This document shows positions 5,687 through 39,647 of a DNA stretch of 64,000 nt, one piece after another; position 1 is the stretch's first letter, and the number at the start of each line of letters is the position of its first letter. The notes beneath the pieces are model-generated. The model searched no databases and was not told the DNA's origin. It saw nothing but the letters and a program-made list of their open reading frames with translations. Where the stretch lies: positions 186,001 to 250,000 of IMG/VR virus record IMGVR_UViG_3300024999_000030; one strand, given 5' to 3'. The position numbers were made by a program, and so were the translations under genes.

Positions 5687-7366
5687 ATGGAACTAGAACT
5701 TAAACAGAAAAAAGAACGGGCACATGAAGCTTTGGCGCGATTATCTGGAATTGCCATCAGAGAAACAGTCCGAGGAATTGCTACTATCTCCATTAGGGAA
5801 AAGGTCCTAGAGGAAATTCGTGGCTATGAAGTTGATATTCTAAACTTAATCATAGCCGTGGATACATCAGTTGAATCGAAAACATCTAATGTTAAATTCA
5901 AAATGGGAGATAGAGTAGGCTGTAACTCTGGACCAAAGGGAGGAACCATTTGTAGTGAGGTCTTCTTTATTCGTGGTGAAGAAGCCTACATGGTTCGATG
6001 GCCAAAGGAATATGGAACACAAGGCTGTTTTGCCTTTCAGCTCTACCATTTGTTTAGTTTTAAGGTTGGAGATTGGGTACGGTTCATTGATCGTCCAGGA
6101 GTGTCTGGTACAATTACCAATATCAATACCAATTCATACTTTAGATACGAATTCATACCAAGTGATTCTACACTTAAATGTCCCAAATGGTATGGAGGAG
6201 ATAAAATTGAATTGGTTCCAGAATTCCAAAGCGGGGATATAATTCGGGTTATAGATAAACCCGAAAGAACGGGAACAGTTATTGGCGAGATTTGCCAAAG
6301 AAGCTTAATTCAAGTAAAGTGGGCAGAGGAAACTTCGGCAATTAGAAGAGAGTACATAGAACACACCACCAAATTTCACAAAGGAGACAGGGTCCGTCAT
6401 AATATGGATCCCCGTTTAGTGGGAGTAATTGAGGAAGTTGTTGGGCATTCCCATACAGCTTTTTATAAGATTCTTTGGGACGATAATCGAAGAGAAGCTT
6501 GCTGGGAAAACCAACTCGAAATTTCAATAAAACCTATCCCGATTTTAGTAAAGCCTAACCTGGGATTCAAAGTTGGAGATAAGGTTGCAGAGGTGGGTAG
6601 TTCCGCTGAAGGAGTAATTACCGATGTTGGCTACGGGTATGGCCCAACATACACGGTTGATTGGGACGTCAACTTAAAGAGTGAACATAAAGGTGCAAAA
6701 CACTATACTCATGAATTGCGTCTCTTATCCAAACTTGAAACCAAACCCACTTCAAACAAATTCAAAGTCGGAGATAAAGTATATCGTAACGATATTCCAT
6801 CGGACAGGGGAAAAATTATTACCGACTGTCTAAGCCCAAACAATTTATATCTTATTGAATGGGAAGATAAACGGGGTAACTGGAAAGAACATTGTTATGA
6901 TACAGAAATTAGTCTTCTACCTCCAAGCGAGTTTAAAGTAGGAGACAGAGTAGGTAGTATCGCAAGTAATGCTGAGGGAACAATTTCCTATGTCGACTAT
7001 AGCTCTAACTACGATTATGCCTATATAATCGATTGGGATAATTTAGAGCCCTTCGAAAAAAGTGCCGGGACACTTTATAGCTCTTTTGAGTTACGCCACC
7101 TGTCTAAACCTGACACCAAATCCAACACAAAAGGAGAAGATGAAATGAGGCACACAACATATCCTCCGTTTAACGGCAATGAAATCGATACAAGTAAACC
7201 CTTCTGGATTATTTTCTGTCCTCATTGTAACAATGTTACTTTGAAGCAGACAGAAGCGGATGCGAAGGCAGAAGCCGAGCGTCTCACTCAACTCACGGGG
7301 GAGGCTCACCTTCTCTTTGAGCAAAAGGGAATGTGTTCTCCTCAGAAACAGGTAACCTGGAGTTAA
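5687..7366 (+). CDS. Multi-repeat SH3/KOW-like protein (about 7 FKxGD(R/K/W)V units) plus C-terminal module
   Basis: Repeated FK(V/M)GD(R/K/W)V...G.I......Y.(V/I).W units; GGAG SD before ATG 5687; second SD+ATG at 7145. Confidence 0.75.
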   Translation: MELELKQKKERAHEALARLSGIAIRETVRGIATISIREKVLEEIRGYEVDILNLIIAVDTSVESKTSNVKFKMGDRVGCNSGPKGGTICSEVFFIRGEEAYMVRWPKEYGTQGCFAFQLYHLFSFKVGDWVRFIDRPGVSGTITNINTNSYFRYEFIPSDSTLKCPKWYGGDKIELVPEFQSGDIIRVIDKPERTGTVIGEICQRSLIQVKWAEETSAIRREYIEHTTKFHKGDRVRHNMDPRLVGVIEEVVGHSHTAFYKILWDDNRREACWENQLEISIKPIPILVKPNLGFKVGDKVAEVGSSAEGVITDVGYGYGPTYTVDWDVNLKSEHKGAKHYTHELRLLSKLETKPTSNKFKVGDKVYRNDIPSDRGKIITDCLSPNNLYLIEWEDKRGNWKEHCYDTEISLLPPSEFKVGDRVGSIASNAEGTISYVDYSSNYDYAYIIDWDNLEPFEKSAGTLYSSFELRHLSKPDTKSNTKGEDEMRHTTYPPFNGNEIDTSKPFWIIFCPHCNNVTLKQTEADAKAEAERLTQLTGEAHLLFEQKGMCSPQKQVTWS

Positions 7367-9806: not shown

Positions 9807-10418
9807 TATTTTTTAATGTCCGATTTTCCGCTTCCAAAAGGAATCTTAAATGACTTAGATGGAATTTCTTTTGTTGGTAAGCTGGACAAAGGCACTATGG
9901 TTAGTGGGTTATCTTTTGTTGTTTCAACCATGACTCAGATAGATTCTATATTTACCGAGGAGTGGTCAACCTACTATAAAGTTGATATTCAATATGTGCC
10001 GATGGGAGTTAAGGTGGTTTTATGGAAAAAATGAAAGAATTTTTTTGGGTGATTCTATTTTGTTTAACATGGATTAGTGGGATAACCCTTAGCATTGTTT
10101 CAGTTAAGATTTTGGGTTTATCTTTCTCATTCTTTGTTGTTGTTTTAATCATAAGCATTGCTGAGAGTTGGGTTCTTTTGTTTTGTATTAGAAGAGCCAG
10201 CAAGTATTGAACGAAGAAACATTCAAGTCTAATTTTATCACGGTCTTTCTTGCAACTTGGGTGGCAAACAATTATCAAGAGGCCATTAATAATGGGGAGC
10301 ATGAAAAGCTCAATCATCCTCCCGTTGAAGATGCTGAGATGCTTGCGAACGAAGCGTGGCGAGAAATCTTGAGCAATTGTGTGTGCCACTTCAAATTAAC
10401 TTAGGAAGTATCCAGAGC

Positions 10419-10452
10419 CAGTAAGTCAATGTCGCAGGGCGTTGGCTTACTG
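10419..10452 (+). promoter_or_regulatory. 15-bp hairpin upstream of the first Cys-family cluster
   Basis: CAGTAAGTCAATGTC-gcag-GGCGTTGGCTTACTG pairs fully with G-U wobbles. Confidence 0.6.
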
Positions 10453-10482
10453 TAATGTGGGTATAACCGGAGGAGGTAAACG

Positions 10483-10773
10483 ATGAATGGATTCACGAAC
10501 CATTATATTTCTGCAATGCAAGACTTCATCGCTAACCCCTGTGTAAAACGATGGCGAGGGGTTGAGAGATTAAGTGATCTTAATTGTAAATGTTTACTTT
10601 TAGGGGTTTCTCAAATAGGCTCCTGTGTCGGCTGTCCATTTTATTCTTTTCATCCGAATGGCAGTGCCTGTCCTCGCTTAAATACAGCCTCCAGAAAAAA
10701 ATTAAATTTGTTTATTCCAAGGTTAGTTCTTGCTTGTTTAGAAGCTATTGCTTATTTACAGGCTAAGGAGTAA
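10483..10773 (+). CDS. Four-Cys (FIxNP) family paralogue 1
   Basis: DFIANP...CKC...CVGCPF...CPR...LACLEAIAYL. Confidence 0.8.
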   Translation: MNGFTNHYISAMQDFIANPCVKRWRGVERLSDLNCKCLLLGVSQIGSCVGCPFYSFHPNGSACPRLNTASRKKLNLFIPRLVLACLEAIAYLQAKE

Positions 10774-10775
10774 AT

Positions 10776-11156
10776 ATGGCAAATTTAAGAAGGGTTACCG
10801 ATCAAAATCGTCAGGAACAAATTAAAGCCTTTGAGGCCTTTATTGATAATCCAACTTTGGAAAATCGGAAACACCTGGCGAAAGTGATGCTTTTTGATAG
10901 TGGGCGAGATGGCAAACGAGGCTTTTGTTCGCTTTCTCGGCGAGAAGATGAAGTCTATCCTATTGTTGAGGCTTGTGAGGGGTGCCCGTTTTTTACAAGT
11001 GGTCTCAAAAGTTATTGTCCAAGAACAGAATGGATAATGGAAGAGGACTTTCCTTCGTTAACCTTAAATCGTCGTGAAGAAATACAACAAGGCCAGGTTG
11101 CTGTTTTTATTCTGGCGTGTGTCCAGGCGATTGCTCACCTTAGGATTAAAGAGTAA
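10776..11156 (+). CDS. Four-Cys family paralogue 2
   Basis: AFIDNP...FCS...CEGCPF...YCPR...LACVQAIAHL. Confidence 0.8.
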   Translation: MANLRRVTDQNRQEQIKAFEAFIDNPTLENRKHLAKVMLFDSGRDGKRGFCSLSRREDEVYPIVEACEGCPFFTSGLKSYCPRTEWIMEEDFPSLTLNRREEIQQGQVAVFILACVQAIAHLRIKE

Positions 11157-11459
11157 ATGAAAGATATTTTGCAAAACTCTCTAAATGCTTTGCAAAATTT
11201 TATTGATAATCCTAATCCAGAAACCTTTAAACAGGTTTACGAATCTTTTGCAGTCTTTAGAGTATGTCCTCTTGCCACAAAATATGAAAATATAGATATG
11301 TATCATTGTGAAAATTGTCCATTTCCCCGTGTGTTTAATCGTACTCGACTATTACAATGCCTTAGACAATATGGATATAGCTTTGATTCATCGAAATATT
11401 TAGGCCAAATGCTTGTTGCTTGTATTGAAGCAAAGGTTCTTCTGGAGGGCAGTAAATGA
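11157..11459 (+). CDS. Four-Cys family paralogue 3
   Basis: NFIDNP...CPL...CENCPF...QCL...VACIEAKVLL. Confidence 0.8.
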   Translation: MKDILQNSLNALQNFIDNPNPETFKQVYESFAVFRVCPLATKYENIDMYHCENCPFPRVFNRTRLLQCLRQYGYSFDSSKYLGQMLVACIEAKVLLEGSK

Positions 11460-11809
11460 CGAGAATAGAAATACTTAAATCACAAATCAAAGCTCTTCAA
11501 TCTTTTATTAACAACCCAATTAAAAATAATTGGAATAATATTTCATTAGCTTTTACTCAGGGATCAGCAGGAGGTCAAAAATGTACTCTAGCTGGCCCCG
11601 ATAATTCATATGGAACATGTCGTTCGTGTGTTTGGGCTAAAATAGATTATACCTACCCACGAAGTAAACGGTTTCGTAAGTTGTTACTTGGACACACCAA
11701 TAGAGTAAAATACTGTGGACCAGCATATCCAGAGACCGAACAACTTCCTTCGGTTATCCTAGCCTGTATTGAATCTGTGGCTAAACTGGAGGTTCTTTTG
11801 GAGGAATAA
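11456..11809 (+). CDS. Four-Cys family paralogue 4
   Basis: SFINNP...KCTL...CRSCVW...YCGP...LACIESVAKL. Confidence 0.8.
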   Translation: MTRIEILKSQIKALQSFINNPIKNNWNNISLAFTQGSAGGQKCTLAGPDNSYGTCRSCVWAKIDYTYPRSKRFRKLLLGHTNRVKYCGPAYPETEQLPSVILACIESVAKLEVLLEE

Positions 11810-18546: not shown

Positions 18547-18730
18547 GAGCTGAAATGAAATTTAATAAAGGACACATCTTAGAGGCTGGAGATAGACTCC
18601 ATACGATGATTATTTTATCGGAGGAGTTGCTTAGAAATCATCCAGCACTTAAAAAAGCCAAATTAAACAAACGCTTTAAGAAAGTGATTAAAAAACTTAA
18701 TAACATGTATCAAAAAGTTTGGCAATTAAA

Positions 18731-19303
18731 ATGAAATCTCAGTCACTGAAACATAAATTCACTTACGAATGGATAGCGATATTTGGTTATGTTCCAGTTA
18801 AAAAAGACTTTGTCGCATACAATAGAAATGGTATAATTTTTCAAGGTCGTGTAATTTCTCCTCGCCCCACTTATTATGGAAACATTACCGTTGACCCTGG
18901 CGTTGGTTTAACTGAGCCCTTTCACATAGTCGGCGCGGCTGAGGTAATCTCAATTTTAACTTCAGATGGTAAGCGCTTTGCAAACGAAGAAAATAAATCT
19001 TCAGAAGGAATTTTTCCTGCTGGCTGGCAAATTCCTGTTGGTTGGCGAATTATGGGACCTAAGAAACAAGGAGGAGAAACGATGTGGTCTGATTATCCGA
19101 ATTTTAACCAAAACGGTGTTGACACAAGCGTGAATGATTTTTGGATTATTTTTTGTCCCGTCTGTAACAATGTAACTCTCGCCAAAGACGAGGCGGCGGT
19201 GAAGACCAAAGCAGAAGAGCTTACTGAGAAAAGCGGAAACCCTCATGTAATTTTTCACTCGAAGGGAGTTTGTACTCCAACCCGTAATGTGGTTTGGAGC
19301 TAA
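18731..19303 (+). CDS. Protein with shared C-terminal module (internal start at 19082)
   Basis: FWIIFCPVCNNVTL...CTPTRNVVWS nearly matches the end of 5687..7366. Confidence 0.7.
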   Translation: MKSQSLKHKFTYEWIAIFGYVPVKKDFVAYNRNGIIFQGRVISPRPTYYGNITVDPGVGLTEPFHIVGAAEVISILTSDGKRFANEENKSSEGIFPAGWQIPVGWRIMGPKKQGGETMWSDYPNFNQNGVDTSVNDFWIIFCPVCNNVTLAKDEAAVKTKAEELTEKSGNPHVIFHSKGVCTPTRNVVWS

Positions 19304-19310
19304 TATTATC

Positions 19311-19980
19311 TAGGGCCTCTTTCTGAATTGTAGGCTGAATTGACGAAAGCAGTGTGGACGAGATCAAACGGCTTAAATGAGCGTTTAGTCGCACTGAAAG
19401 GTTAAGGATGCCGAAGCCCTATTACATGGCGTGTCGGAAGAGGTGTCCCAGAAAGAAGGTGACTGTGTTTTATTGTCGCAGCCCTTGACTAATGTTTATA
19501 ATACAAAGTAATTGTATAAAAGAATATAATGAACGAGTAACCTGGGACGTAGGCTCATCCCCTCCTCAGGGCGTGTTAAATTTTTAAAACTGTTGCCTGA
19601 GACATCTTAACTAATGTTGGGTGTTGTAGAAGGGCGATAGTTAATTCTTGGATTAGAAATCATGCGGCCCCCTTATGATGAATTGAAACGTTTAATACCG
19701 CGCCAATCCCATAAGATGTGGTTCGAAAAACAACGCTGCAGCGTTGTAGTGACTCTAATCTAGAAAGGAGAATAACATTGGCCGCTTATATAAACATAAT
19801 GGTCAGATGTAGAAGCTCGGATTAAATAATCCCCATAACTAAAAAATGGAGTCGAGTGCCCGGGAAGTTGAACTGATATCCTTACAGGCTTTTAAAAATT
19901 AAGTCCACTATCCTGTGTTTAAAAATAAACCCAGGATCTGATGGTCAGATGTAAGATGTTATCAGTTTGCCCCGGGGCAA
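19311..19980 (+). ncRNA. Large structured non-coding region A
   Basis: No + strand ORF over 60 aa. Many stems by eye: TAGGGC/GCCCTA, CCTCTTTCTG/CAGAAAGAAGG, CTCAGG/CCTGAG, AACTGATA/TATCAGTT, CTTACA/TGTAAG, palindrome 19731..19746. Confidence 0.55.
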
Positions 19981-20035
19981 GGTTAATGCAGCCGGATGAT
20001 AATCCGCCAGTCCCAAGCCTGGAAATGCAGAGGGG
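19981..20035 (+). ncRNA. Twister ribozyme (P1-type order, weak or absent P1)
   Basis: U-AA, P2 UGC/GCA, A-GC, P3 CGGAU/AUCCG, P4 CCAG/CUGG, L4 UCCCAAGC, GA-GGG for T2 pseudoknot. Matches remembered twister consensus; predicted cut U19984/A19985. Confidence 0.85.
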
Positions 20036-20048
20036 AATAGGAAATGTT

Positions 20049-20360
20049 ATGAAAAAATATTCTATGCAAAATTTTAATGATGCTCTTGATAATTTAATTA
20101 ATAACCCGAGTAAAAAAACTTTCATTGCTTTTTTAAGAATTGCTGGTGAGGCTCCGGGAGATTGTCCACTATGTAGGTACTTAAGTAATGTCCGTAGACT
20201 AGATATACCTTGTTCATTTAAAGATTTGGATTGTCCTATGGGATTAAATTCAAATACCCATGAATTTGTATGTGCGCCATCATCTATAAATCTCATTCCT
20301 TTATCTAGAGTAGTAACCAAAGCAATCGAACTTAAAGCGTTCTTAGAAACAATAAAATAA
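20049..20360 (+). CDS. Four-Cys family paralogue 8
   Basis: NLINNP...DCPLC...CSF..DCP...VCAP...KAIELKAFL; the 5' extension in the ORF track overlaps the ribozyme. Confidence 0.75.
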   Translation: MKKYSMQNFNDALDNLINNPSKKTFIAFLRIAGEAPGDCPLCRYLSNVRRLDIPCSFKDLDCPMGLNSNTHEFVCAPSSINLIPLSRVVTKAIELKAFLETIK

Positions 20361-20985: not shown

Positions 20986-21369
20986 ATGCCGAAACTAATT
21001 TTAGTAAGGGGTTTACCTGGCAGTGGAAAATCTACCATTGCAATTCAAAATTACCCTCAGTTTGCACATTGGGAATCGGATATGTTCTTCATTAAAAAGA
21101 ATGGAGAATATATTTTCGACACTCGTTTAATCCATGTGGCTCATAAATGGTGTTTACATAAAGTTGAGACCGATCTTAAGAGTGGTAAAAATGTAATAGT
21201 AAGTAATACATTTATTGCTCGTTCAGATATAAAACCATATATAGAACTTGCTAATAAATTAAACATAGAAATTGAAGTAATTACTGCAAGAGGTGAGTAC
21301 GGAAGTATCCACGGTGTTTCAGAAGATATTATAACAAAAATGAAAATTAGATGGCAGGAGTACCCATGA
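20986..21369 (+). CDS. P-loop kinase (T4 Pnk kinase-like / AAA_33)
   Basis: LILVRGLPGSGKST Walker A; VIVSNTF; HGV near C-terminus. Confidence 0.85.
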   Translation: MPKLILVRGLPGSGKSTIAIQNYPQFAHWESDMFFIKKNGEYIFDTRLIHVAHKWCLHKVETDLKSGKNVIVSNTFIARSDIKPYIELANKLNIEIEVITARGEYGSIHGVSEDIITKMKIRWQEYP

Positions 21370-28235: not shown

Positions 28236-29127
28236 GTGTTGTGGCTATAATTTGTGGCTATCTAACATTAATCTACAATAGGAGAATAAAAATGGATTGG
28301 ATCGTAAATCTTATCACCGAATGGAAGTGGAATGGATTTATGTCACTTTTACTTTATTGGCTCCCGCTTTCGTTCTGTGTAGTCGGTTATACTTTACGTA
28401 CCGCCCGAAATTATATTAGAGATAAAAGAAGACTCGCGGAATATTTAAGCAGCAGGGGCAATAAGGTTGCTAAATCTAAAGAAATTATTTATCCAAGACA
28501 AGAATATTATCCTACCGACACCATAGGAACCCTTATTGGTAGATCGATTGTTTCCATTGTTCCTATCGGAAATCTTTGGGCTGCATTGTTTGACCTTGCC
28601 CCCGAAGTCTTTCGTAAGTTTTTTAAGTGGCTCGGCAAAGTATTTGATTTTCCGCTTGTGCCTGGACCGAAAGAAGATGCCTAAAGTAGACATTGACGCT
28701 CTAGAAAAACTTTACAATGAATCTACTCCGGGGCCATGGATAGTTAGGGATATGAAATTTGTTCATGCCCCATGCCCCTGTTGTGGAGATGTTGCTGAGT
28801 GCGTGCAGTATGGCCCAGGAAATGATAAGGAAAACTACAATACAGAAATTATCGTGGCGATGCACACAGCCCTACCGCACCTCATTACTGAACTAAGAGC
28901 CGCAAGAAGAAAGAATAGGAAAAAGTAAATGGAAAATAAATACAAACAAGTGTTGGAGACTTATAGATGCTTATTGAGTTGCAGAAAAAATCTTCCAGGA
29001 CTTAGCCTAGAAAGCGCATTTAATGAAGATGCCGTTAGGGATTTGGAAGAAGAATATGCTTGGCTGCAACAACAAAAACAATATGAAAGCCATACCGGGA
29101 TTAATTGTCCTCCTCCATAATTTAAAA

Positions 29128-29385
29128 GTGGACCTCGCCAGTGTGTAAGTAGGCACTCCCAGAATCATTTACAAGGGGGAGACACCGACGGCTGGAAGGT
29201 AGTATAATATTTATACTATCATCTGGTGAGATGCCCCATTGGAGGCCTAGCTTCGTCAAATCTCCATCGCGGTAAGGTGGAAATGATGGGCGGACTAGAA
29301 GCCCTCTGTCGCCACCGCTCTAGTGAAGATTGTTCCTAGAGCCGGCTCGTCGATGTAAGTCGGCGAGTCGTAATGTAGGAATAAA
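29128..29385 (+). ncRNA. Candidate structured RNA D
   Basis: CTCGCCAG/CTGGTGAG, CTCCC/GGGAG, TAGTATA/TATACTA, CCATC/GATGG, GCTCTAG/CTAGAGC, CTCGTCGA/TCGGCGAG. Confidence 0.5.
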
Positions 29386-29412
29386 TCTAACTTAACTTAT
29401 ATCGGAGATAAC

Positions 29413-29589
29413 ATGGCCAACAAACGGTGGGAAGAATACGGTCACGTGGTTGAAGAAGTTAGAAGTGAGTGGCATAAGGTGATTTATGTAGATGGTGTTC
29501 AGGTTAATGAGACTTTCAGTGAGGCTATTGGAAGAATTATGGCCGAGGAAAGTTTAAAGAAATTAATGAATCCAAATCCTAAACAGTAA
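29413..29589 (+). CDS. 58-aa hypothetical protein between two structured RNAs (not in ORF track)
   Basis: GGAG SD, ATG 29413, MANKRWEEYG...NPNPKQ stop. Confidence 0.55.
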   Translation: MANKRWEEYGHVVEEVRSEWHKVIYVDGVQVNETFSEAIGRIMAEESLKKLMNPNPKQ

Positions 29590-29592
29590 CAC

Positions 29593-29828
29593 CACATTAA
29601 CGCGGGAAGTAGGCTTAAGGGCAGCCATCTTTTAAAGAGTGAGGGCTGGCCATGTGCAGATAATATCGTCTTCGTTCGCAGGGTAGCATAAGAAGACCGA
29701 AGGATAGATTTTTAAAAATTCACAATCTATCTGGGGACGGCCATGGGCACCACTTGCAGCAAACAGAGGATTGTCAAGGACAATCTGTACTGTTCCTCTC
29801 TGGCGTAAAAGCACACCTCGTTAATGTG
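29593..29828 (+). ncRNA. 23S rRNA L11-binding (GTPase-associated centre, H43/H44) mimic with 162-nt insert
   Basis: GGAAGTAGGCTTAAGGGCAGCCATCTTTTAAAGAGT(G)...GCGTAAAAGCACAC versus remembered E. coli 23S ~1055-1104 GGAUGUUGGCUUAGAAGCAGCCAUCAUUUAAAGAAAGCGUAAUAGCUCAC; closed by perfect CACATTAACG/CGTTAATGTG. Confidence 0.8.
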
Positions 29829-30072
29829 TTTTAAATATTTGATAATGGGAGAGATAAAATGCCCACAAATAAAGTAGAAGTATTAATGGGGTCTTATGAA
29901 TCACCTAGGCCAGTAAAATGTTGTATTTGCCATTGCCCCATGTATTACATAGGGGATATTAGATATGAAGCAGAGATAAAAATGGAATTAACAAGTCATG
30001 AAATACCTTCAGTTGATCATGAAATTTTTTATGCTCATGCCAGATGTTTAATGCCATTGATCGGAGGTTGAA

Positions 30073-30440
30073 ATGAGAACAATTGCCATTGTGTTGTGTG
30101 ATAATGATTATCATTATACTTTTCCTTCTCTTTTGAAATCAGTATATGAAGCGATAAAGAGTTGGGATGGTTGTTTAAAAGACGAGCAATTAAACGAAGA
30201 TGACATTCGAGCCCTAATTAGATCTGGATTGGAATTTTTTTATCGAGGGTTCCAACAGGAGGTAGAGGTCATGGTCCGTGTGCTAGTGGATTTTTGCCAG
30301 TAGAGCACAGGGTTGAATATCTGCGCAAAGAAATAAAAATTCTTTTCGATGAAAAAGCTGAAAAACACATCCAATAACATGATCATGATGGTGGTTCATG
30401 GTATTTAGAAATAGCTACTGGAAAGGTTTATAGTTATTAA
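30073..30440 (+). pseudogene. Disrupted hypothetical gene (-1 frameshift near 30255 plus in-frame TAA at 30375)
   Basis: After ...FFYRGFQ the -1 frame reads GHGPCASGFLPVEHRVEYLRKEIKILFDEKAEKHIQ*HDHDGGSWYLEIATGKVYSY, which looks protein-like on both sides of the stop. Confidence 0.55.
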
Positions 30441-30602
30441 TTTTTAATTCAATATTGAAAACTACAAGAGACGATGCTTGGCGCCGAAGTGATCGTCAGG
30501 GTGTAAAAACCTAAGCCCTGCCATTCTGGTTCAAGTAGAGGTGACTGTATAGCCGTGGTGCATCTATTACAGTTTAAAGGGCTTGCACCAAAAGGAGAAT
30601 AC

Positions 30603-35546: not shown

Positions 35547-37079
35547 ATGGAACGTAAAGTAAAAACTGGTCCAAAAATTATTGGTCTCGCTTTACTTGTT
35601 ATTGGCCTTATCTTCGGTGGAAAGTGGGTGTTGAACAACACTAATATTATTCCGAAGGGATCTAGTGGTACAAGCAAATCTTTCTTTAAACACGCTAAGG
35701 AACCTCTTAAGGTTTGTGTGGTTACCTGGGGAGGTTATGCTGGTGGTCAGTATTATAATCGTGGTTTCAAACCGAATGACGACTCTCAGTATCTGAAGAA
35801 GTATGATCTTCCTGTAGAGTTTGTTGTTATCGACGATTATAACGCATCCAGAGAGGCGTGGAAGGCCGATGCAGTCCAGGTGCTGTGGACTACTGCTGAC
35901 TCGTTTCCGACCGAAGCTGGGGCACTACAGCGCGCCGGATACAAACCTAAAATCATTTTTCAGTCTGACTGGTCCCGTGGTGGAGATGTCATTGTTAGTA
36001 CCCGAGTTATTAACTCCATTCAGGATCTCAAGGGTAAGCGAGTTAGTGTTGCTTTCGGCACCCCATCCCACACCTTCCTGCTGCGTTCGTTAGAGGCGGT
36101 AGGTATGACGGTTAAAGACCTCAAACTTATTGAGGTTCCGTCTGCTGTTGATTCTGCCACGGCCTTTAAGGCTGGACAGGTTGAGGCGGCGGTGGTGTGG
36201 TCCCCTGACGATGAAGACTGCATTAGTAAGGTTTCAGGAGCTAAGGCTCTCGCTTCCACTAAACAAGCTACCCATATCATCGCCGATGTTTTCTATGCTA
36301 AGGAAGAAATTATTGAGAAGCGTAGAGACGACATCAAGGCTTTGGTAGAAGGTTGGATGATTGGTGCGGCGGAAGTTAACTCTAGCCCCACTGCCCGCTC
36401 TCAGGCTGTTAAGATTCTGGCCGAGGGTTTGAATCAACCTGATGGTTTCATTGATCAGGCAATTAACAATGTTCGCTTAAACACCTACGGAGACAATGTG
36501 AACTTCTTTAATCTTCGTGGAAGTTTTACTGGTGTAACTGGCGAACAGCTTTATCTTGAGACCGGTAGATTGTATCAGGAAAATACCAACCTGGTTCCAG
36601 ATGGTATGCCTTCCTGGAGAGTTATTAGCGATGCCAGTATTCTTCGTGATATCAATCTCACTGGCGTTAATGATGGTGCTGAATCTGACTTTAAGTTCTC
36701 TCAGCCCACCAAGTCTCTTGAAACCGCTCCAGCTCTTAGCACTAAGCGTTTATCTGTGAGCTTCGCCACGGGCTCAGCCTCTCTCGATGCCAACGCTAAG
36801 ACGATTATTGACCTTGGGTTTGTTCCCACGGCTAAGTCGTTTGCTAGTGCCCGCATCAGAATCGAAGGTAACACAGATAGTACGGGTAGTGCCTCGACCA
36901 ACGAGCGTCTTTCCTATCTTCGCGCTAAAGCTGTTGCTGGATATCTTTCCGAGCAGTATGGATTTGACAGCAATCGTTTCGTCATCGTTGGTAATGGTCC
37001 CAATAAACCAATAGCTGACAATGACACCGAAGAGGGCCGTTCTGCTAATCGTCGCACCGATTTTGAGTTGGTGCGGTAA
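35547..37079 (+). CDS. ABC substrate-binding (SsuA/NMT1-THI5-like) - OmpA C-terminal fusion
   Basis: N-terminal TM anchor; DLKGKRV..AFGTPSH..L; C-terminal FATGSASL..IEGNTDSTG..NERLSYLRAKAV..NRRTDF OmpA motifs. Confidence 0.88.
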   Translation: MERKVKTGPKIIGLALLVIGLIFGGKWVLNNTNIIPKGSSGTSKSFFKHAKEPLKVCVVTWGGYAGGQYYNRGFKPNDDSQYLKKYDLPVEFVVIDDYNASREAWKADAVQVLWTTADSFPTEAGALQRAGYKPKIIFQSDWSRGGDVIVSTRVINSIQDLKGKRVSVAFGTPSHTFLLRSLEAVGMTVKDLKLIEVPSAVDSATAFKAGQVEAAVVWSPDDEDCISKVSGAKALASTKQATHIIADVFYAKEEIIEKRRDDIKALVEGWMIGAAEVNSSPTARSQAVKILAEGLNQPDGFIDQAINNVRLNTYGDNVNFFNLRGSFTGVTGEQLYLETGRLYQENTNLVPDGMPSWRVISDASILRDINLTGVNDGAESDFKFSQPTKSLETAPALSTKRLSVSFATGSASLDANAKTIIDLGFVPTAKSFASARIRIEGNTDSTGSASTNERLSYLRAKAVAGYLSEQYGFDSNRFVIVGNGPNKPIADNDTEEGRSANRRTDFELVR

Positions 37080-37129
37080 ACTAAATTTTATAATGGGGGC
37101 CCATATTGGGCCCCCTCTATGGAGGTCAT

Positions 37130-37759
37130 ATGAAAAAGTTTCTGATTACTATGGCGTTGTCGATTTTCTGTGTTACAAACTGGGCCACTTTTACTGGGCT
37201 CACACTTATTCCTACTAGTGATTACATTGGTAAGGATGTGTGGTCTATTGGTGGGCAGGCCTGCTATACTAAGTTCCACACCGATCAGTTTCTTATTACT
37301 GAGTTTGGTTTGGGAGATAGATGTGAAGTGGGGTTTGACTTCTACGCCAATCCACAACAAGTTGAGCATCGTGAATATTTTAACTTTAAATACATGGTGC
37401 TTAAAAGCGACAGCCATAAGTTTTTTGTCAGCGTTGGGTTTTACAACATGATGGTTACTGGAAATTCCGTTCCGTTTCTTGTGGCCACTAAGGACTTGGG
37501 TTTGATTAGAGTCCACGGTGGGGTTCAATATGAAGGACTAACGGACACTAAAAGTAATTGTATGATTGGCATTGATCGTATATTTACTAATGGTTGACAA
37601 GTGTCTGCCGATTATACACATGGTCAACAGAACTTTTCTTCAATCGGCGTTGGTCGTATTGGTAAGCGTTGGCAAACTTTTGCTGGTGCCATGTATCCTA
37701 ATGCTGGCGGGCGGCCCCTTGTTATGTTGAGGATAATTTTTACTGGCAAGGGGAAGTAA
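37130..37759 (+). pseudogene. Signal-peptide protein, beta-strand rich (possible outer-membrane barrel), with in-frame TGA at 37595
   Basis: The frame continues past TGA as NG*QVSADYTHGQQNFSSIGV...LRIIFTGKGK to TAA 37759. Confidence 0.55.
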
Positions 37760-37983
37760 ATGTTTGAAATTTTAATCAGGGGTTTTAAAACTAAAGCACA
37801 AGCAGAGGCATTTTATAGCTGGTATGAAGGACAAGGAGAACAAGACGCTTGTATATGGTTTGAGTGTAGAAAAGAAGAAGGCGACATAGATGTTGATTCT
37901 ATGTTGACTGATGTCAATGTTGGGAATAAGTGGGTAGGAGATTGTTTGACCTTTGAAGTAACCCCTAATTAAACGGAGATCGC

Positions 37984-38781
37984 ATGGATAGTTTGTTTAC
38001 TTTGCGTGGAACACTGTCCAATAGAAATAAACTCATCGTAGAAATTCTTGGAGCAATGTTACTACTTGTTATTTGGTGGACGGTAGTTAGTACTGGACTT
38101 GTTCGTTCCAGCATTCTTCCTTCCCCAGTAAGCGTTATTACTTCCGTGCCAGAGTTGCATTATCAAGACGCTCTTATTATGAATTGTTTGTATTCCCTAA
38201 AACTTAATATTATGGGATACATCGAAGCAATTCTCATTGCTATTCCCCTTGGGTTTTTTATTGGTCTCATTCCAGTATGTAGGGGAATGACAGAGAGATA
38301 TATTACCGCCTTGAGATACCTTCCACTCACTGCCGTCATTGGCTTATTTATTCTGTGGTTTGGTATCGGCGATGCGATGAAGATTCAATTTTTAACTCTG
38401 GGAATTGTTGTGTATTTATTACCAGTAGTAGTGCAAAGAATCGATGAAGTCCAGCAAGTTTATCTGGACACCATTAAAACTTTAGGAGCTACTAACTGGC
38501 AAACAATTTTTAGGGTTTATATTCCCAGCGTTGTTTCTAGGATATCGGATGATATCCGTGTGCTTGTTGCTATCTCTTGGACTTATATTATCATTGCTGA
38601 AGTAGTGAACAAACAGGACGGTGGCATCGGGGCTCTTATTTTTACAGTAGCGAGACAAAGTAGGGTAGATAAGGTGTTTGCCCTTTTGGCTGTTATTATT
38701 GTAATTGGATTCACTCAAGATAAGTTATTCATGTGGTTAGATAAAATTGCGTTTCCATTTAAATATAAAGGAGGTCGATAA
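37984..38781 (+). CDS. ABC transporter permease (SsuC/TauC-like)
   Basis: About 6 TM helices; EAA-like loop (TIKTLGATNWQTIFRVYIP); IVAE-like IIAE motif. Confidence 0.9.
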   Translation: MDSLFTLRGTLSNRNKLIVEILGAMLLLVIWWTVVSTGLVRSSILPSPVSVITSVPELHYQDALIMNCLYSLKLNIMGYIEAILIAIPLGFFIGLIPVCRGMTERYITALRYLPLTAVIGLFILWFGIGDAMKIQFLTLGIVVYLLPVVVQRIDEVQQVYLDTIKTLGATNWQTIFRVYIPSVVSRISDDIRVLVAISWTYIIIAEVVNKQDGGIGALIFTVARQSRVDKVFALLAVIIVIGFTQDKLFMWLDKIAFPFKYKGGR

Positions 38782-39647
38782 TGGCACGTAGCGTTGGAGA
38801 AGAAATCATCGAGGCCGCCATTAATAATACCTCCGATGGTGTTACTTTTGAGAACACCAAATACCCAGACATAATTGAGTTAAAAGATATCTGCCAGACT
38901 TATGATGGCGGAAAAAATTACACTATTAAGAACTGCAATTTACTTATTGAAAACAAACCGGATCAGGGACAGTTTGTGGTACTACTCGGTATGTCTGGAT
39001 GTGGTAAATCCACATTGTTAAAATATATTGCTGGCCTACAGCAGCCCACATCTGGACAAGTTTTAATTGGTGGAAAACTTCGTTCCGATAAAGATATTGT
39101 CAGTATGGTATTCCAACAATATTCTTCTTTCCCATGGCTCTCTGTGCTTAAAAATGTGATGTTACCCCTAGAGCTTAAGGGCGTATCATCTAAAGAGTGC
39201 AGAGATAAGGCTATGGAAATGTTAAAACTTGTTGGGCTTGTGGAACACAAAGACAAATATGCAATGTATGGACCGTTATCCGGCGGTCAGTTACAGCGCG
39301 TTGCTATTGCCCGTAGTCTTGTTTCCAACCCTAACATCATTTTAATGGACGAGCCCTTTGGTGCTCTTGATGGGGTAACTCGTTATCAAATGCAAGTTCT
39401 TTTATCAAAGATTTGGGAGGCTCTTAAGTCAACCATTATTTTTGTTACTCATGACATTAGAGAGGCTGTATTTTTGGGAGATGATATTTATATTATGGCT
39501 CCTCATGGTGGTAAAATTCTTAAGCATTTCTTTGTAAATTTACCACTACATCGAGATTTAGATATCATGCAGGATCCAATCTTTATTGAGACCGTTCGCC
39601 AGATTGATATAGAAATGAGATCTGCTGCAGAAAAATATTTGAAATAG
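38781..39647 (+). CDS. ABC transporter ATP-binding subunit (SsuB/TauB-like)
   Basis: GMSGCGKST, MVFQ, LSGGQLQR, LMDEPFGALD, VTHD. Confidence 0.95.
   Translation: MARSVGEEIIEAAINNTSDGVTFENTKYPDIIELKDICQTYDGGKNYTIKNCNLLIENKPDQGQFVVLLGMSGCGKSTLLKYIAGLQQPTSGQVLIGGKLRSDKDIVSMVFQQYSSFPWLSVLKNVMLPLELKGVSSKECRDKAMEMLKLVGLVEHKDKYAMYGPLSGGQLQRVAIARSLVSNPNIILMDEPFGALDGVTRYQMQVLLSKIWEALKSTIIFVTHDIREAVFLGDDIYIMAPHGGKILKHFFVNLPLHRDLDIMQDPIFIETVRQIDIEMRSAAEKYLK

What the first reader, a model, noticed from the sequence alone, without database searches (positions are those of the whole stretch)
19311..19980. About 670-nt structured non-coding RNA whose 3' end could be set by a ribozyme
Seen: a long ORF-poor gap in an otherwise densely coding region, with nested stems and one crossing pair set (TAGGGC/GCCCTA versus CCTCTTTCTG/CAGAAAGAAGG). 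ATGGTCAGATGTA occurs twice (about 19799 and 19941). The region ends right at the twister cut site. Known: phages carry large ncRNAs (GOLLD, ROOL) of this size class. Inference: a large ncRNA released by self-cleavage.
Basis: partly seen in the sequence, partly recalled or inferred. Interest (0 to 1): 0.6.

Follow-up and report, generated by a model that had tools for sequence, protein, structure and literature searches.

The report
Twister-ended large phage noncoding RNA candidate
A 332-kb uncultivated groundwater phage carries a roughly 680-base stretch with no gene in it, kept in block-wise conserved form in one distant relative and followed directly by a twister self-cutting RNA, so it is most likely a new large structured RNA whose end is cut by a ribozyme, though it has never been seen as RNA.

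Summary
Window 19304-20048 is a 745-nt ORF-free gap in a 332,730-bp huge phage. A type-P1 twister sits at 19980-20038 (49.2 bits, E 1e-9, below Rfam's cut-off), with its cut site at 19984|19985 and the next gene starting 10 nt after it. No other Rfam family matches.

Only one independent relative was found (L004; flanking proteins 30-85% identical). It keeps the same gap, the same twister and the same ordered conserved blocks, separated by length-variable segments, with no shared reading frame.

Covariance models built from the window's structure alone align L004 with 79-84% of pairs kept and 5, 12 and 11 two-sided changes. Slid controls give 0-5. Most of those changes lie where the alignment was fitted to the structure, so support is moderate.

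The 3' branched hairpin folds independently in both phages (z -4.7 and -3.6).

Among 82 other phage twisters the median upstream ORF-free distance is 23 nt. These two phages have the longest.

Best reading: a new, rare, large structured ncRNA, co-transcribed with its neighbours, with its 3' end made by twister cleavage. Function, 5' end and expression are unknown.

The parts
18719..19303 (+). Upstream gene (194 aa, unknown function, Cys-rich conserved C-terminal part). Its stop codon lies 9 nt before the first conserved RNA block.
   Evidence: ORF list. No Pfam or PHROG match. 42% identical homologue in L004 at 10001-10543. The C-terminal domain is also found in three other metagenomic proteins whose loci show no match to this RNA; one of those contigs ends 67 nt after the gene.
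19304..20048 (+). ORF-free intergenic gap that holds the candidate RNA and the twister.
   Evidence: 18-20 stops in each + frame. The blocks shared with L004 switch frame and contain stops. The syntenic gap in L004 is 10544-11422.
19309..19500 (+). 5' domain. Its conserved blocks are GGGCCTCTT, GAATTGTAGG, TGCCGAAGCCCTA and TGTTTTATTG, around a variable hairpin at 19335-19408. The candidate closing helices are 19309-19315 with 19447-19452 and 19316-19323 with 19436-19443. An alternative stem, 19406-19410 with 19444-19448, would make the second closing helix a pseudoknot.
   Evidence: Model R2, built from the window alone, aligns L004 at 56.8 bits, E 3e-15. 12 two-sided changes against 0-4 in slid controls, and 1 of 500 shuffles reaches the observed value. 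The alternative stem has an A-U to U-A change inside conserved flanks.
19529..19575 (+). Most conserved internal block (85% identity). It has a possible hairpin, CCTGGGA with TCCTCAGG, around a conserved GGCTCATC loop.
   Evidence: Alignment A1. Identity table. G-U in the window becomes A-U in L004 (sequence). The fold of this piece alone is not better than shuffles in the window (z +0.5) and is z -1.6 in L004.
19576..19780 (+). Variable central region (205 nt here, 283 nt in L004). It includes a shared stem-loop at 19594-19640 with a conserved asymmetric internal loop (GAGACA on one side, GTAGAA on the other).
   Evidence: Model R3 aligns L004 at 22.3 bits, E 4e-5, with 11 two-sided changes against 1-5 in slid controls. 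The stem-loop folds alone with z -2.6 and -1.9. The lineage-specific inserts do not align.
19780..19857 (+). Start of the 3' domain. A small hairpin pairs 19780-19784 with 19800-19804.
   Evidence: Alignment A1. In the hairpin, G-U at 19784/19800 becomes U-A in L004 between conserved flanks (sequences). The three small helices that the window-only fold puts at 19815-19857 are poorly kept in L004.
19858..19978 (+). Long branched hairpin that closes the 3' domain. It ends in the conserved palindrome GCCCCGGGGC, 6 nt before the cut site. The second copy of the 13-mer (19941-19953) lies inside it and is not conserved.
   Evidence: Independent folds: window z -4.7 and L004 11247-11354 z -3.6, with 0 of 200 shuffles as stable in either. 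Both have the same architecture but different sequence in the middle helices. Model R1 aligns L004 at 43.8 bits, E 2e-10. Helices 4-6 hold 28 pairs: 5 two-sided changes, 3 one-sided and 3 broken. A-U at 19884/19952 becomes G-C within conserved flanks.
19980..20038 (+). Type-P1 twister ribozyme. The predicted cut is between U19984 and A19985. It would leave a 2',3'-cyclic phosphate on the RNA upstream and a 5'-OH on the mRNA downstream.
   Evidence: RF03160: 49.2 bits, E 1.1e-9, full length, all strongly conserved core positions matched. It is the only copy in the 332-kb genome. The L004 counterpart scores 57.7 bits. Other phage twisters with the same core score 48-64 bits. End chemistry is from PMC6765202.
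20039..20360 (+). Ribosome-binding site (AGGA at 20039-20042) and downstream gene 20049-20360 (103 aa, Cys-rich, unknown function). The gene starts 10 nt after the twister.
   Evidence: The L004 counterpart (11423-11749) is 37% identical and starts 9 nt after its twister.
20986..21369 (+). Context only: a small P-loop kinase (AAA_33; related to phage polynucleotide kinase families). It is conserved at 74% identity at the same place in L004.
   Evidence: Pfam PF13671 E 2e-9; phrog_2071 E 7e-30; phrog_505 polynucleotide kinase E 1e-10.

Best explanation
Window 19309-19984 encodes a single-copy, + strand, roughly 680-nt structured non-coding RNA that belongs to no described family. It has three parts:
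- a conserved 5' domain;
- a length-variable centre;
- a conserved 3' domain closed by a long branched hairpin.

It is probably made as part of the long rightward transcript that also carries its neighbours. No promoter or terminator of its own is visible.

The type-P1 twister directly downstream cuts itself at 19984|19985. That single cut does two things. It gives the RNA a defined 3' end with a 2',3'-cyclic phosphate, 6 nt past its closing helix. It also frees the mRNA of the next gene with a 5'-OH and the folded twister as its leader.

Shown here:
- the stretch is non-coding;
- it is conserved at the same place in one diverged phage;
- the ribozyme is recognised by the model in both phages;
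- pairs are kept in the relative for a structure predicted without it.

Inferred: transcription, cleavage, the nature of the 5' end, and that the RNA acts on its own after release. What it does is unknown. From its size, modular build and phage origin, I take it to be a stable scaffold-like RNA of the GOLLD/ROOL sort rather than a regulator of one gene.
For: Non-coding:
- 18-20 stops per + frame.
- The conserved blocks switch frame and contain stops in both phages.

Conserved:
- L004 shares gene order over about 17 kb, with proteins 27-85% identical.
- It keeps a gap of 879 nt with about a dozen ordered identical blocks of 8-23 nt, separated by segments whose lengths differ.

Ribozyme:
- twister-P1 at 49.2 bits in the window and 57.7 bits in L004, with the core intact.
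- It is the only twister in the genome.
- Sub-threshold scores of 48-64 bits are usual for phage twisters with this core.

Structure:
- Three models were built from the window's own fold only. L004 aligns to them at E 2e-10, 3e-15 and 4e-5.
- L004 keeps 33 of 40, 43 of 51 and 38 of 48 pairs, with 5, 12 and 11 two-sided changes. Slid partners give 0-5.
- The 3' hairpin folds alone in both phages at z -4.7 and -3.6.

Strand:
- The twister and all neighbouring genes are on the + strand.
- 16 Watson-Crick pairs of the window are G-U in L004. On the other strand these would be mismatches.

Context:
- Among 82 other phage twister-P1 sites, the median ORF-free distance upstream is 23 nt and half have an ORF starting within 33 nt downstream.
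- The window (674 nt) and L004 (807 nt) have the two longest upstream gaps.
- In several other long gaps the twister follows a tRNA or a skipping-rope RNA, so twisters after RNA genes have precedent.
- Processing of polycistronic transcripts is the role proposed in the literature (PMC6765202).
Against: - Only two lineages are known, so covariation cannot be judged statistically.
- All but one of the 28 two-sided changes lie where the model-guided alignment is not fixed by flanking sequence identity.
- Among pairs whose alignment is fixed by flanking identity and that vary, 9 are kept and 7 are broken. The window-only structure is therefore wrong in places, notably at 19815-19857, 19560-19571 and 19465-19479.
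- Whole-region folding energy is ordinary for this genome (z -0.4 here, -0.8 in L004). It is the same on both strands.
- Overall nucleotide identity of the RNA is 57%, no higher than that of neighbouring genes at 51-73%.
- There is no expression data.
- No own promoter, terminator or 5' processing signal was found.
- The twister is below Rfam's gathering score and its P1 stem is almost unpaired.
Confidence: 0.55

Rival explanations
1. It is a cis-acting part of the operon's mRNA rather than a free RNA. One form is a long structured 3' tail that protects the upstream message once the twister has cut, because a cyclic-phosphate end plus terminal hairpins blocks 3' exonucleases. The other form is a long leader that sets how often the twister folds and cuts, and so how much of the downstream 103-aa protein is made.
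For: - Only 9 nt lie between the upstream stop codon and the first conserved helix.
- No promoter-like or terminator-like site precedes the RNA in either phage.
- Twisters in phages normally sit in short spacers just ahead of an ORF.
- mRNA processing and stability control is the role proposed for them (PMC6765202).
- Sequences just upstream (GCCCCGGGGC) could pair with twister segments if the closing helix is not formed (anchor-anchor pairs listed).
Against: - A stabiliser needs one hairpin, not about 680 nt with a dozen blocks kept identical between phages whose proteins are about 50% identical.
- The other 82 phage twisters do without such an element.
- Once cut, the upstream part can no longer act in cis on the downstream gene.
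Confidence: 0.27
2. It is a DNA-level element, such as a replication origin, a packaging site or a cluster of protein-binding sites. On this reading the inverted repeats matter as DNA, and the twister next to it is a coincidence.
For: - The long hairpin is as stable on the - strand as on the + strand (z -4.7 and -4.5).
- Whole-region z-scores are equal on both strands.
- There are two exact or near-exact 13-nt direct repeats.
- There is an AT-rich stretch at 19486-19530 with promoter-like hexamers.
Against: - Cumulative GC skew rises steadily through the region with no turn.
- There is no iteron array. Only two-copy repeats occur, and the second copy of the main repeat is absent in L004.
- The promoter-like sites are no more frequent than in shuffles and are not conserved in L004.
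- Many Watson-Crick to G-U changes are tolerated only in + strand RNA.
- The element abuts the twister within 6 nt in both phages.
Confidence: 0.08
3. It is decaying remains of one or more genes, or of a mobile element such as an intron, and has no function of its own.
For: - Overall identity of 57% is no higher than that of neighbouring genes.
- The central part is not alignable between the two phages.
Against: - No reading frame is shared by the conserved blocks.
- Both flanking genes are complete, with their own stop and start, so nothing is interrupted.
- No intron or other Rfam model matches even at E 10.
- Blocks of 8-13 identical bases in a fixed order, in phages this far apart, point to selection.
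Confidence: 0.05

Closest known systems
Type-P1 twister self-cleaving ribozyme (Rfam RF03160)
   Same: For 19980-20038 only. It is a full-length match to the model. The UAA at the cut site, GCC, GUCCCAAGCC and GAGGG are all present. The P2 and P4 stems are formed. The same element is present in the relative. Like most phage copies, it sits just ahead of an ORF.
   Different: The score is below Rfam's gathering cut-off, P1 is almost unpaired and the loops are short. What lies upstream is a long non-coding RNA rather than the end of a gene. The upstream ORF-free distances here (674 nt) and in L004 (807 nt) are the two longest of 84 phage sites compared.
GOLLD and ROOL, large ornate RNAs of phages and prophages
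   Same: It is phage-encoded, roughly 600-800 nt long, and of unknown function. It is modular, with well-conserved end domains and a poorly conserved middle. GOLLD likewise has a conserved 3' part and a less conserved 5' part (PMC12286853).
   Different: Neither model, nor any of the 4227 Rfam families, matches at E up to 10. There is no tRNA within 64 kb, whereas GOLLD and ROOL often lie near tRNA islands. As far as I know from memory, neither is described as ending at a self-cleaving ribozyme. Only two lineages are known here, against hundreds for those families.
Self-cleaving ribozymes as intercistronic processing sites in bacteria and phages, and ribozymes in the 5' UTRs of RNA viruses
   Same: A small ribozyme sits between two functional units of one transcript and immediately ahead of a translation start. 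Cleavage yields a 5'-OH message (PMC6765202. PMC13725137).
   Different: In those cases the upstream product is another message or a short leader. Here it would be a long conserved structured RNA. The translational role was shown in eukaryotic hosts, not in phages.
Phage twisters that follow tRNA or skipping-rope RNA genes (loci L120, L099, L048)
   Same: A twister-P1 lies a few hundred nt downstream of a non-coding RNA gene on the same strand and ahead of an ORF.
   Different: Those upstream RNAs are small and of known families. Models R1 and R2 for the 3' and 5' domains of the present RNA find nothing in those loci.

Membership tests
twister-P1 ribozyme (RF03160) | Match to the family covariance model at or above the curated gathering score (67.2 bits) | tested here: not met
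   49.2 bits in the window and 57.7 bits in L004. Five other phage twisters found through their exact core score 48-64 bits, also below the cut-off. The cut-off is therefore strict for phage copies.
twister-P1 ribozyme (RF03160) | Strongly conserved core nucleotides: UAA at the cut site, GCC, GUCCCAAGCC, GAGGG | tested here: met
   All are matched in the cmscan alignments of both phages. The two twisters are 87% identical, the highest value of any segment compared.
twister-P1 ribozyme (RF03160) | Stems P2 and P4 formed; CCC and GGG available for the tertiary pseudoknot | tested here: met
   In the alignments no non-standard pair is marked in P2 or P4. CCC at 20012-20014 and GGG at 20033-20035 are conserved in both phages. 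That these triplets form the pseudoknot is from my knowledge of the family.
twister-P1 ribozyme (RF03160) | Stem P1 closing the ribozyme | tested here: not met
   Two of the four P1 pairs are marked non-standard in each phage. From memory, P1 is dispensable for catalysis in vitro. A weak P1 would favour release of the upstream product.
twister-P1 ribozyme (RF03160) | Site-specific self-cleavage giving a 2',3'-cyclic phosphate and a 5'-OH | not testable with these tools
   This needs an in vitro transcription and cleavage assay. No RNA run holds this DNA.
GOLLD / ROOL / other described large ncRNAs (OLE, raiA, HEARO and the rest of Rfam 15) | Match to the family covariance model | tested here: not met
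   No match at gathering scores anywhere in the window. No match at E up to 10 in 19100-20200 apart from the twister and one chance-level hit. The same holds in L004.
GOLLD / ROOL | Frequent location next to tRNA islands in phages and prophages | tested here: not met
   ARAGORN finds no tRNA or tmRNA in the 64-kb window. The family trait is taken from PMC12286853.
Self-splicing intron (group I or II) | Interrupts a gene; matches the intron core | tested here: not met
   The upstream protein ends at its native C-terminus, as in three other homologues. The downstream gene has its own RBS and start. No intron model matches.
Conserved structured RNA (general criterion: covariation) | Helices kept through compensatory changes across homologues | tested here: inconclusive
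   Two lineages only. There are 28 two-sided and 23 one-sided pair-preserving changes on model-guided alignments, against 0-5 two-sided per domain in slid controls. Among pairs whose alignment is fixed by flanking identity, 9 varying pairs are kept and 7 are broken.

The most novel reading that the evidence does not exclude
This is the founding example of a new class of large ornate phage RNA whose maturation is built in: a twister ribozyme cuts the RNA free at the base of its closing helix. The product would be a stable, cyclic-phosphate-ended RNA of about 680 nt that acts in trans during infection of an unknown groundwater host. It might act as an assembly or scaffold like the GOLLD and ROOL cages. 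The perfectly conserved GC palindrome next to the cut site could serve as a self-pairing contact. The phage's own RtcB ligase and PNK-like kinase could act on the ends that cleavage creates.
Probability: 0.3. Interest if true: 0.75.

Novelty: new variant of a known kind. Interest (0 to 1): 0.55.

Why it matters
Large structured RNAs of phages (GOLLD, ROOL) are few, their functions are unknown, and they recently proved to form RNA-only cages. Each further class is a new test case.

The biological role of twister ribozymes in bacteria and phages is also still open. A locus where a twister sits exactly at the end of a long conserved non-coding RNA, and 10 nt ahead of the next gene, gives a concrete and testable job for the ribozyme: making the 3' end of an RNA and the 5' end of a message in one cut.

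The survey made here suggests that this intercistronic position is the rule for phage twisters. Of the 82 other phage twisters, half lie within 23 nt of the upstream ORF and half within 33 nt of the next same-strand ORF.

The limits are real. There are two lineages, both uncultivated, and no RNA data.

Tried and rejected
Searches for more homologues that gave only the same phage or chance hits:
- blastn of the region against GenBank phages.
- tblastn of two neighbouring proteins against GenBank phages.
- Flanking proteins in IMG/VR.
- Word-indexed protein searches.
- A full HMMER search with the upstream protein. Its three distant hits lie in loci without the RNA.
- Conserved-block patterns in IMG/VR.
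- A conserved-block pattern in JGI metagenomes. Of 18 hits, 16 are chance matches in GC-rich DNA and 2 are the same phage. This pattern was a poor choice, and it used the only metagenome scan.
- A conserved-block pattern in GTDB genomes (one chance hit).
- Cluster members of the flanking proteins. These gave the same phage, with two SNPs and scaffold gaps.

Expression: no RNA runs hold the DNA. Laying contigs of four DNA runs showed only the identical phage and no variants.

Linkage to twisters: models R1 and R2 found nothing in 79 other twister-bearing phage loci. They also found nothing in L033, which has a twister in a 550-nt gap.

Thermodynamic stability of the whole region was rejected as evidence.

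Its anchored subset showed only invariant pairs, which say nothing.

RNAalifold on plain MAFFT alignments gave inconsistent structures because the variable hairpins were misaligned.

Flanking proteins: no Pfam or PHROG family and no useful Atlas lead.

A second ORF-poor stretch at 28929-30555 turned out to be a run of small ORFs with no RNA family match.

Considered and rejected: tRNA or tmRNA, an intron, a riboswitch or any known RNA family, and a small conserved peptide.

Full report
WHERE THE WINDOW LIES. The window is bases 186001-250000 of a 332,730-bp virus record that CheckV rates complete. The same sequence is on record as a groundwater metagenome assembly and as a GenBank assembly of about 332.7 kb. 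It occurs in groundwater DNA runs of three studies, and no RNA run holds it. Almost all genes in the window are on the + strand, and cumulative GC skew rises steadily through it.

THE OBSERVATION. ORF 18719-19303 ends with TAA at 19301-19303. The next credible gene starts at ATG 20049, preceded by AGGA at 20039-20042. The 745 nt between them have 18-20 stop codons in every + frame. The 13-mer ATGGTCAGATGTA occurs exactly twice, against 0.08 matches expected by chance.

Rfam finds nothing in the window at gathering scores. With the permissive threshold on 19100-20200, the only meaningful match is twister-P1. It lies at 19980-20038 on the + strand, scores 49.2 bits against a cut-off of 67.2, and has E 1.1e-9. 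The match is full length and every strongly conserved position is present. It is the only twister in the genome.

A RELATIVE. The upstream protein has one clear homologue (42% identity) on a 22.7-kb JGI contig, fetched as L004. Gene order is shared over the whole locus, with proteins 27-85% identical. Between the two homologous flanking genes L004 has an 879-nt gap. A twister-P1 (57.7 bits) lies at its 3' end, 9 nt before the next start codon.

The two gaps share about a dozen identical blocks of 8-23 nt in the same order. The blocks are separated by segments that differ in sequence and length. For example, the centre is 205 nt in the window and 283 nt in L004. The blocks do not share a reading frame and contain stops, so the element is non-coding in both phages.

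Overall identity is 57%, within the range of neighbouring genes (51-73%). The twister (87%) and the block at 19529-19575 (85%) are the best-conserved pieces of the whole neighbourhood.

NO FURTHER HOMOLOGUES. Every other route gave only the same phage or chance matches. The routes were protein searches, block patterns in viral, metagenomic and genomic collections, GenBank phages, and cluster members. A more distant phage (L033; 60% identity in the best-conserved neighbouring protein) has a twister in a 550-nt gap but nothing like this RNA. The RNA is single-copy in its own genome.

IS IT A STRUCTURED RNA? Energy alone does not say. The region beats shuffles by z -2.8 on both strands. It is ordinary compared with other pieces of the same genome (z -0.4; L004 -0.8).

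To avoid circularity, I built three covariance models from the window only (two identical rows, with RNAalifold supplying the structure). I then asked how L004 fits them.
- 3' domain (19801-19984): 43.8 bits, E 2e-10. 33 of 40 comparable pairs are kept, with 5 two-sided changes against 0-1 when the partners are slid.
- 5' domain (19309-19500): 56.8 bits, E 3e-15. 43 of 51 pairs are kept, with 12 two-sided changes against 0-4 slid. Only 1 of 500 shuffles reaches the observed value.
- Centre (19529-19715): 22.3 bits. 38 of 48 pairs are kept, with 11 two-sided changes against 1-5 slid.

These alignments are fitted to the structure, so I also sorted pairs by whether flanking sequence identity alone fixes the alignment. 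Of such pairs, 32 never vary, 9 vary and stay paired (one through a double change, 19884/19952, A-U to G-C), and 7 break. The broken ones cluster in three small helices (19815-19857, 19560-19571, 19465-19479) that the single-sequence fold probably got wrong.

By eye there are two further anchored double changes:
- G-U to U-A at 19784/19800;
- A-U to U-A in an alternative stem, 19406-19410 with 19444-19448.

Independent folding gives the cleanest result. The 121-nt branched hairpin 19858-19978 and its 108-nt counterpart in L004 each fold far better than shuffles (z -4.7 and -3.6, 0 of 200). They share the same order of helices and loops, although the middle helices differ in sequence.

I conclude that a conserved fold is likely. 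The 3' hairpin and the closing helix of the 5' domain are its best-supported parts. Two lineages cannot prove the rest.

WHICH STRAND. The hairpin is as stable on the - strand. Three things point to the + strand as the functional one:
- the twister and all neighbouring genes are on the + strand;
- the models match only the + strand of L004;
- 16 Watson-Crick pairs of the window are G-U in L004, which would be A-C mismatches on the other strand.

TAGGGC/GCCCTA is invariant between the phages, which is no evidence either way. The crossing helix CCTCTTTCTG/CAGAAAGAAGG keeps 6 of 9 pairs in L004. The same pyrimidine tract has two other purine-rich partners:
- 19436-19443 (GGAAGAGG), which keeps 7 of 8 pairs through three G-U-type changes;
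- a local GAAAG at 19345-19349, whose L004 counterpart is a stronger 7-8-bp local stem.

If the alternative stem 19406-19410 with 19444-19448 is real, the 19316-19323 with 19436-19443 helix is itself a pseudoknot. Only the first copy of the 13-mer is conserved, as GGTCAGATG.

HOW TWISTERS SIT IN OTHER PHAGES. A scan of IMG/VR for the exact twister core returned about 100 stretches, of which 79 loci were read. None holds a match to the 5' or 3' domain models.

For 82 twister sites, the median distance back to the nearest ORF of 70 aa or more is 23 nt. Only three sites exceed 500 nt, and half have a same-strand ORF starting within 33 nt downstream. The window (674 nt) and L004 (807 nt) have the two longest upstream gaps.

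Of the four other loci with long upstream gaps (488 nt or more) that I scanned, two hold a tRNA and one a skipping-rope RNA upstream of the twister. Their twisters score 48-64 bits, also under Rfam's cut-off.

The usual place of a phage twister is thus a short spacer just ahead of a gene. This fits the processing role proposed in the literature (PMC6765202). The present locus is that same arrangement with a long conserved RNA as the upstream product.

MECHANISM I COMMIT TO. The rightward transcript runs through 18719-20360. No promoter-like or terminator-like site beyond chance precedes the RNA in either phage, and only 9 nt separate the stop codon from the first conserved helix.

The twister folds and cuts at 19984|19985. 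The upstream product ends 6 nt after the closing helix of the 3' domain with a 2',3'-cyclic phosphate. The downstream product is the message of the 103-aa Cys-rich protein, with a 5'-OH and the folded twister as its leader (end chemistry). The nearly unpaired P1 would let the two products part.

How the 5' end of the RNA is made, and whether it stays attached to the upstream message, is open. That is the main difference between my best explanation (0.55) and the cis-acting rival (0.27). A DNA-level element (0.08) and a decayed gene (0.05) fit the data poorly.

COMPARISON WITH WHAT IS KNOWN. The 59-nt element is a twister-P1 by sequence and secondary structure, but it is under the curated score and its activity is untested. 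The 680-nt RNA is a member of no Rfam family. It resembles GOLLD and ROOL in size, phage origin and modular conservation. It differs in having no nearby tRNAs and in its ribozyme end (for the family traits). I rate it a new variant of a known kind: a candidate new class of large phage RNA with a built-in 3' end maker.

SIDE OBSERVATIONS. The phage encodes an RtcB ligase outside the window and no Rnl-type RNA ligase. A PNK-like P-loop kinase lies 1 kb downstream of the twister and is conserved in L004. These enzymes act on exactly the ends a twister makes, but phage RNA-repair genes are common and the link is only a lead.

LIMITS. There are two lineages, both uncultivated, and no RNA data. My choice of a GC-rich pattern wasted the single metagenome scan. 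The structure given is a single-sequence prediction that is only partly confirmed.

Noticed in passing
G000:C1:264121-265227 (outside the window; locus L044) and window 20986-21369: The phage encodes a full-length RtcB RNA ligase (355.7 bits) and no Rnl-type RNA ligase. A small PNK-like AAA_33 kinase lies 1 kb downstream of the twister and is 74% identical at the same place in L004. RtcB joins cyclic-phosphate and 5'-OH ends, which are exactly the ends twister cleavage makes.
   Followed up: partly
window 19969-19978; L004 11345-11354: The perfect 10-nt GC palindrome GCCCCGGGGC is identical in both phages and ends 6 nt before the cut site. It can pair within the molecule, closing the 3' hairpin with a bulge in the window. 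In principle it could also pair with a second copy of the RNA.
   Followed up: no
window 19626-19632 and 19809-19815 (compare TTGTAGG at 19328-19334): GTAGAAG occurs twice, each time in a conserved unpaired context. L004 has GTAGAAA and GCAGAAG at the matching places. It may be a repeated tertiary or protein-binding motif.
   Followed up: no
window 19484-19496 and 19606-19618: A second near-exact 13-nt direct repeat, CTTGACTAATGTT and CTTAACTAATGTT. The first copy overlaps a block that is partly conserved in L004.
   Followed up: no
L033 6569-7116 (twister at 6769-6841): A more distant phage from other metagenomes has a twister-P1 (42.8 bits) in the middle of a 550-nt ORF-poor gap ahead of a 563-aa gene. 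About 200 nt lie before the twister and 275 nt after it, and neither part resembles the RNA studied here.
   Followed up: partly
79 IMG/VR loci L045-L123: Phage twister-P1 copies sit in short intergenic spacers. The median distance from the upstream ORF is 23 nt, and half have a same-strand ORF starting within 33 nt downstream. Several contigs carry two copies. This is a consistent intercistronic position.
   Followed up: partly
L120 1101-1474; L099 1685-2060; L048 3865-4787: In three of the four other long-gap loci scanned, the twister follows an RNA gene on the same strand. In L120 and L099 it is a tRNA about 240 nt upstream. In L048 it is a skipping-rope RNA about 780 nt upstream. All these twisters score below Rfam's gathering cut-off.
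   Followed up: partly
window 35547-39647: The phage carries what look like transport genes in a row. A 510-aa protein has a substrate-binding (NMT1/phosphonate-binding) part and an OmpA domain. It is followed by an ABC permease and an ABC ATPase.
   Followed up: no
window 28929-30555: A second stretch without long ORFs turned out to be a run of small + strand ORFs (58-76 aa) with no RNA family match.
   Followed up: yes
L004 10544-10633: L004 has about 90 extra nt between the upstream stop codon and the first conserved RNA block. They include a GC-rich stem with an A6 loop. The window has only 9 nt there. It is unclear whether this is an extra 5' helix of the RNA or a spacer.
   Followed up: no
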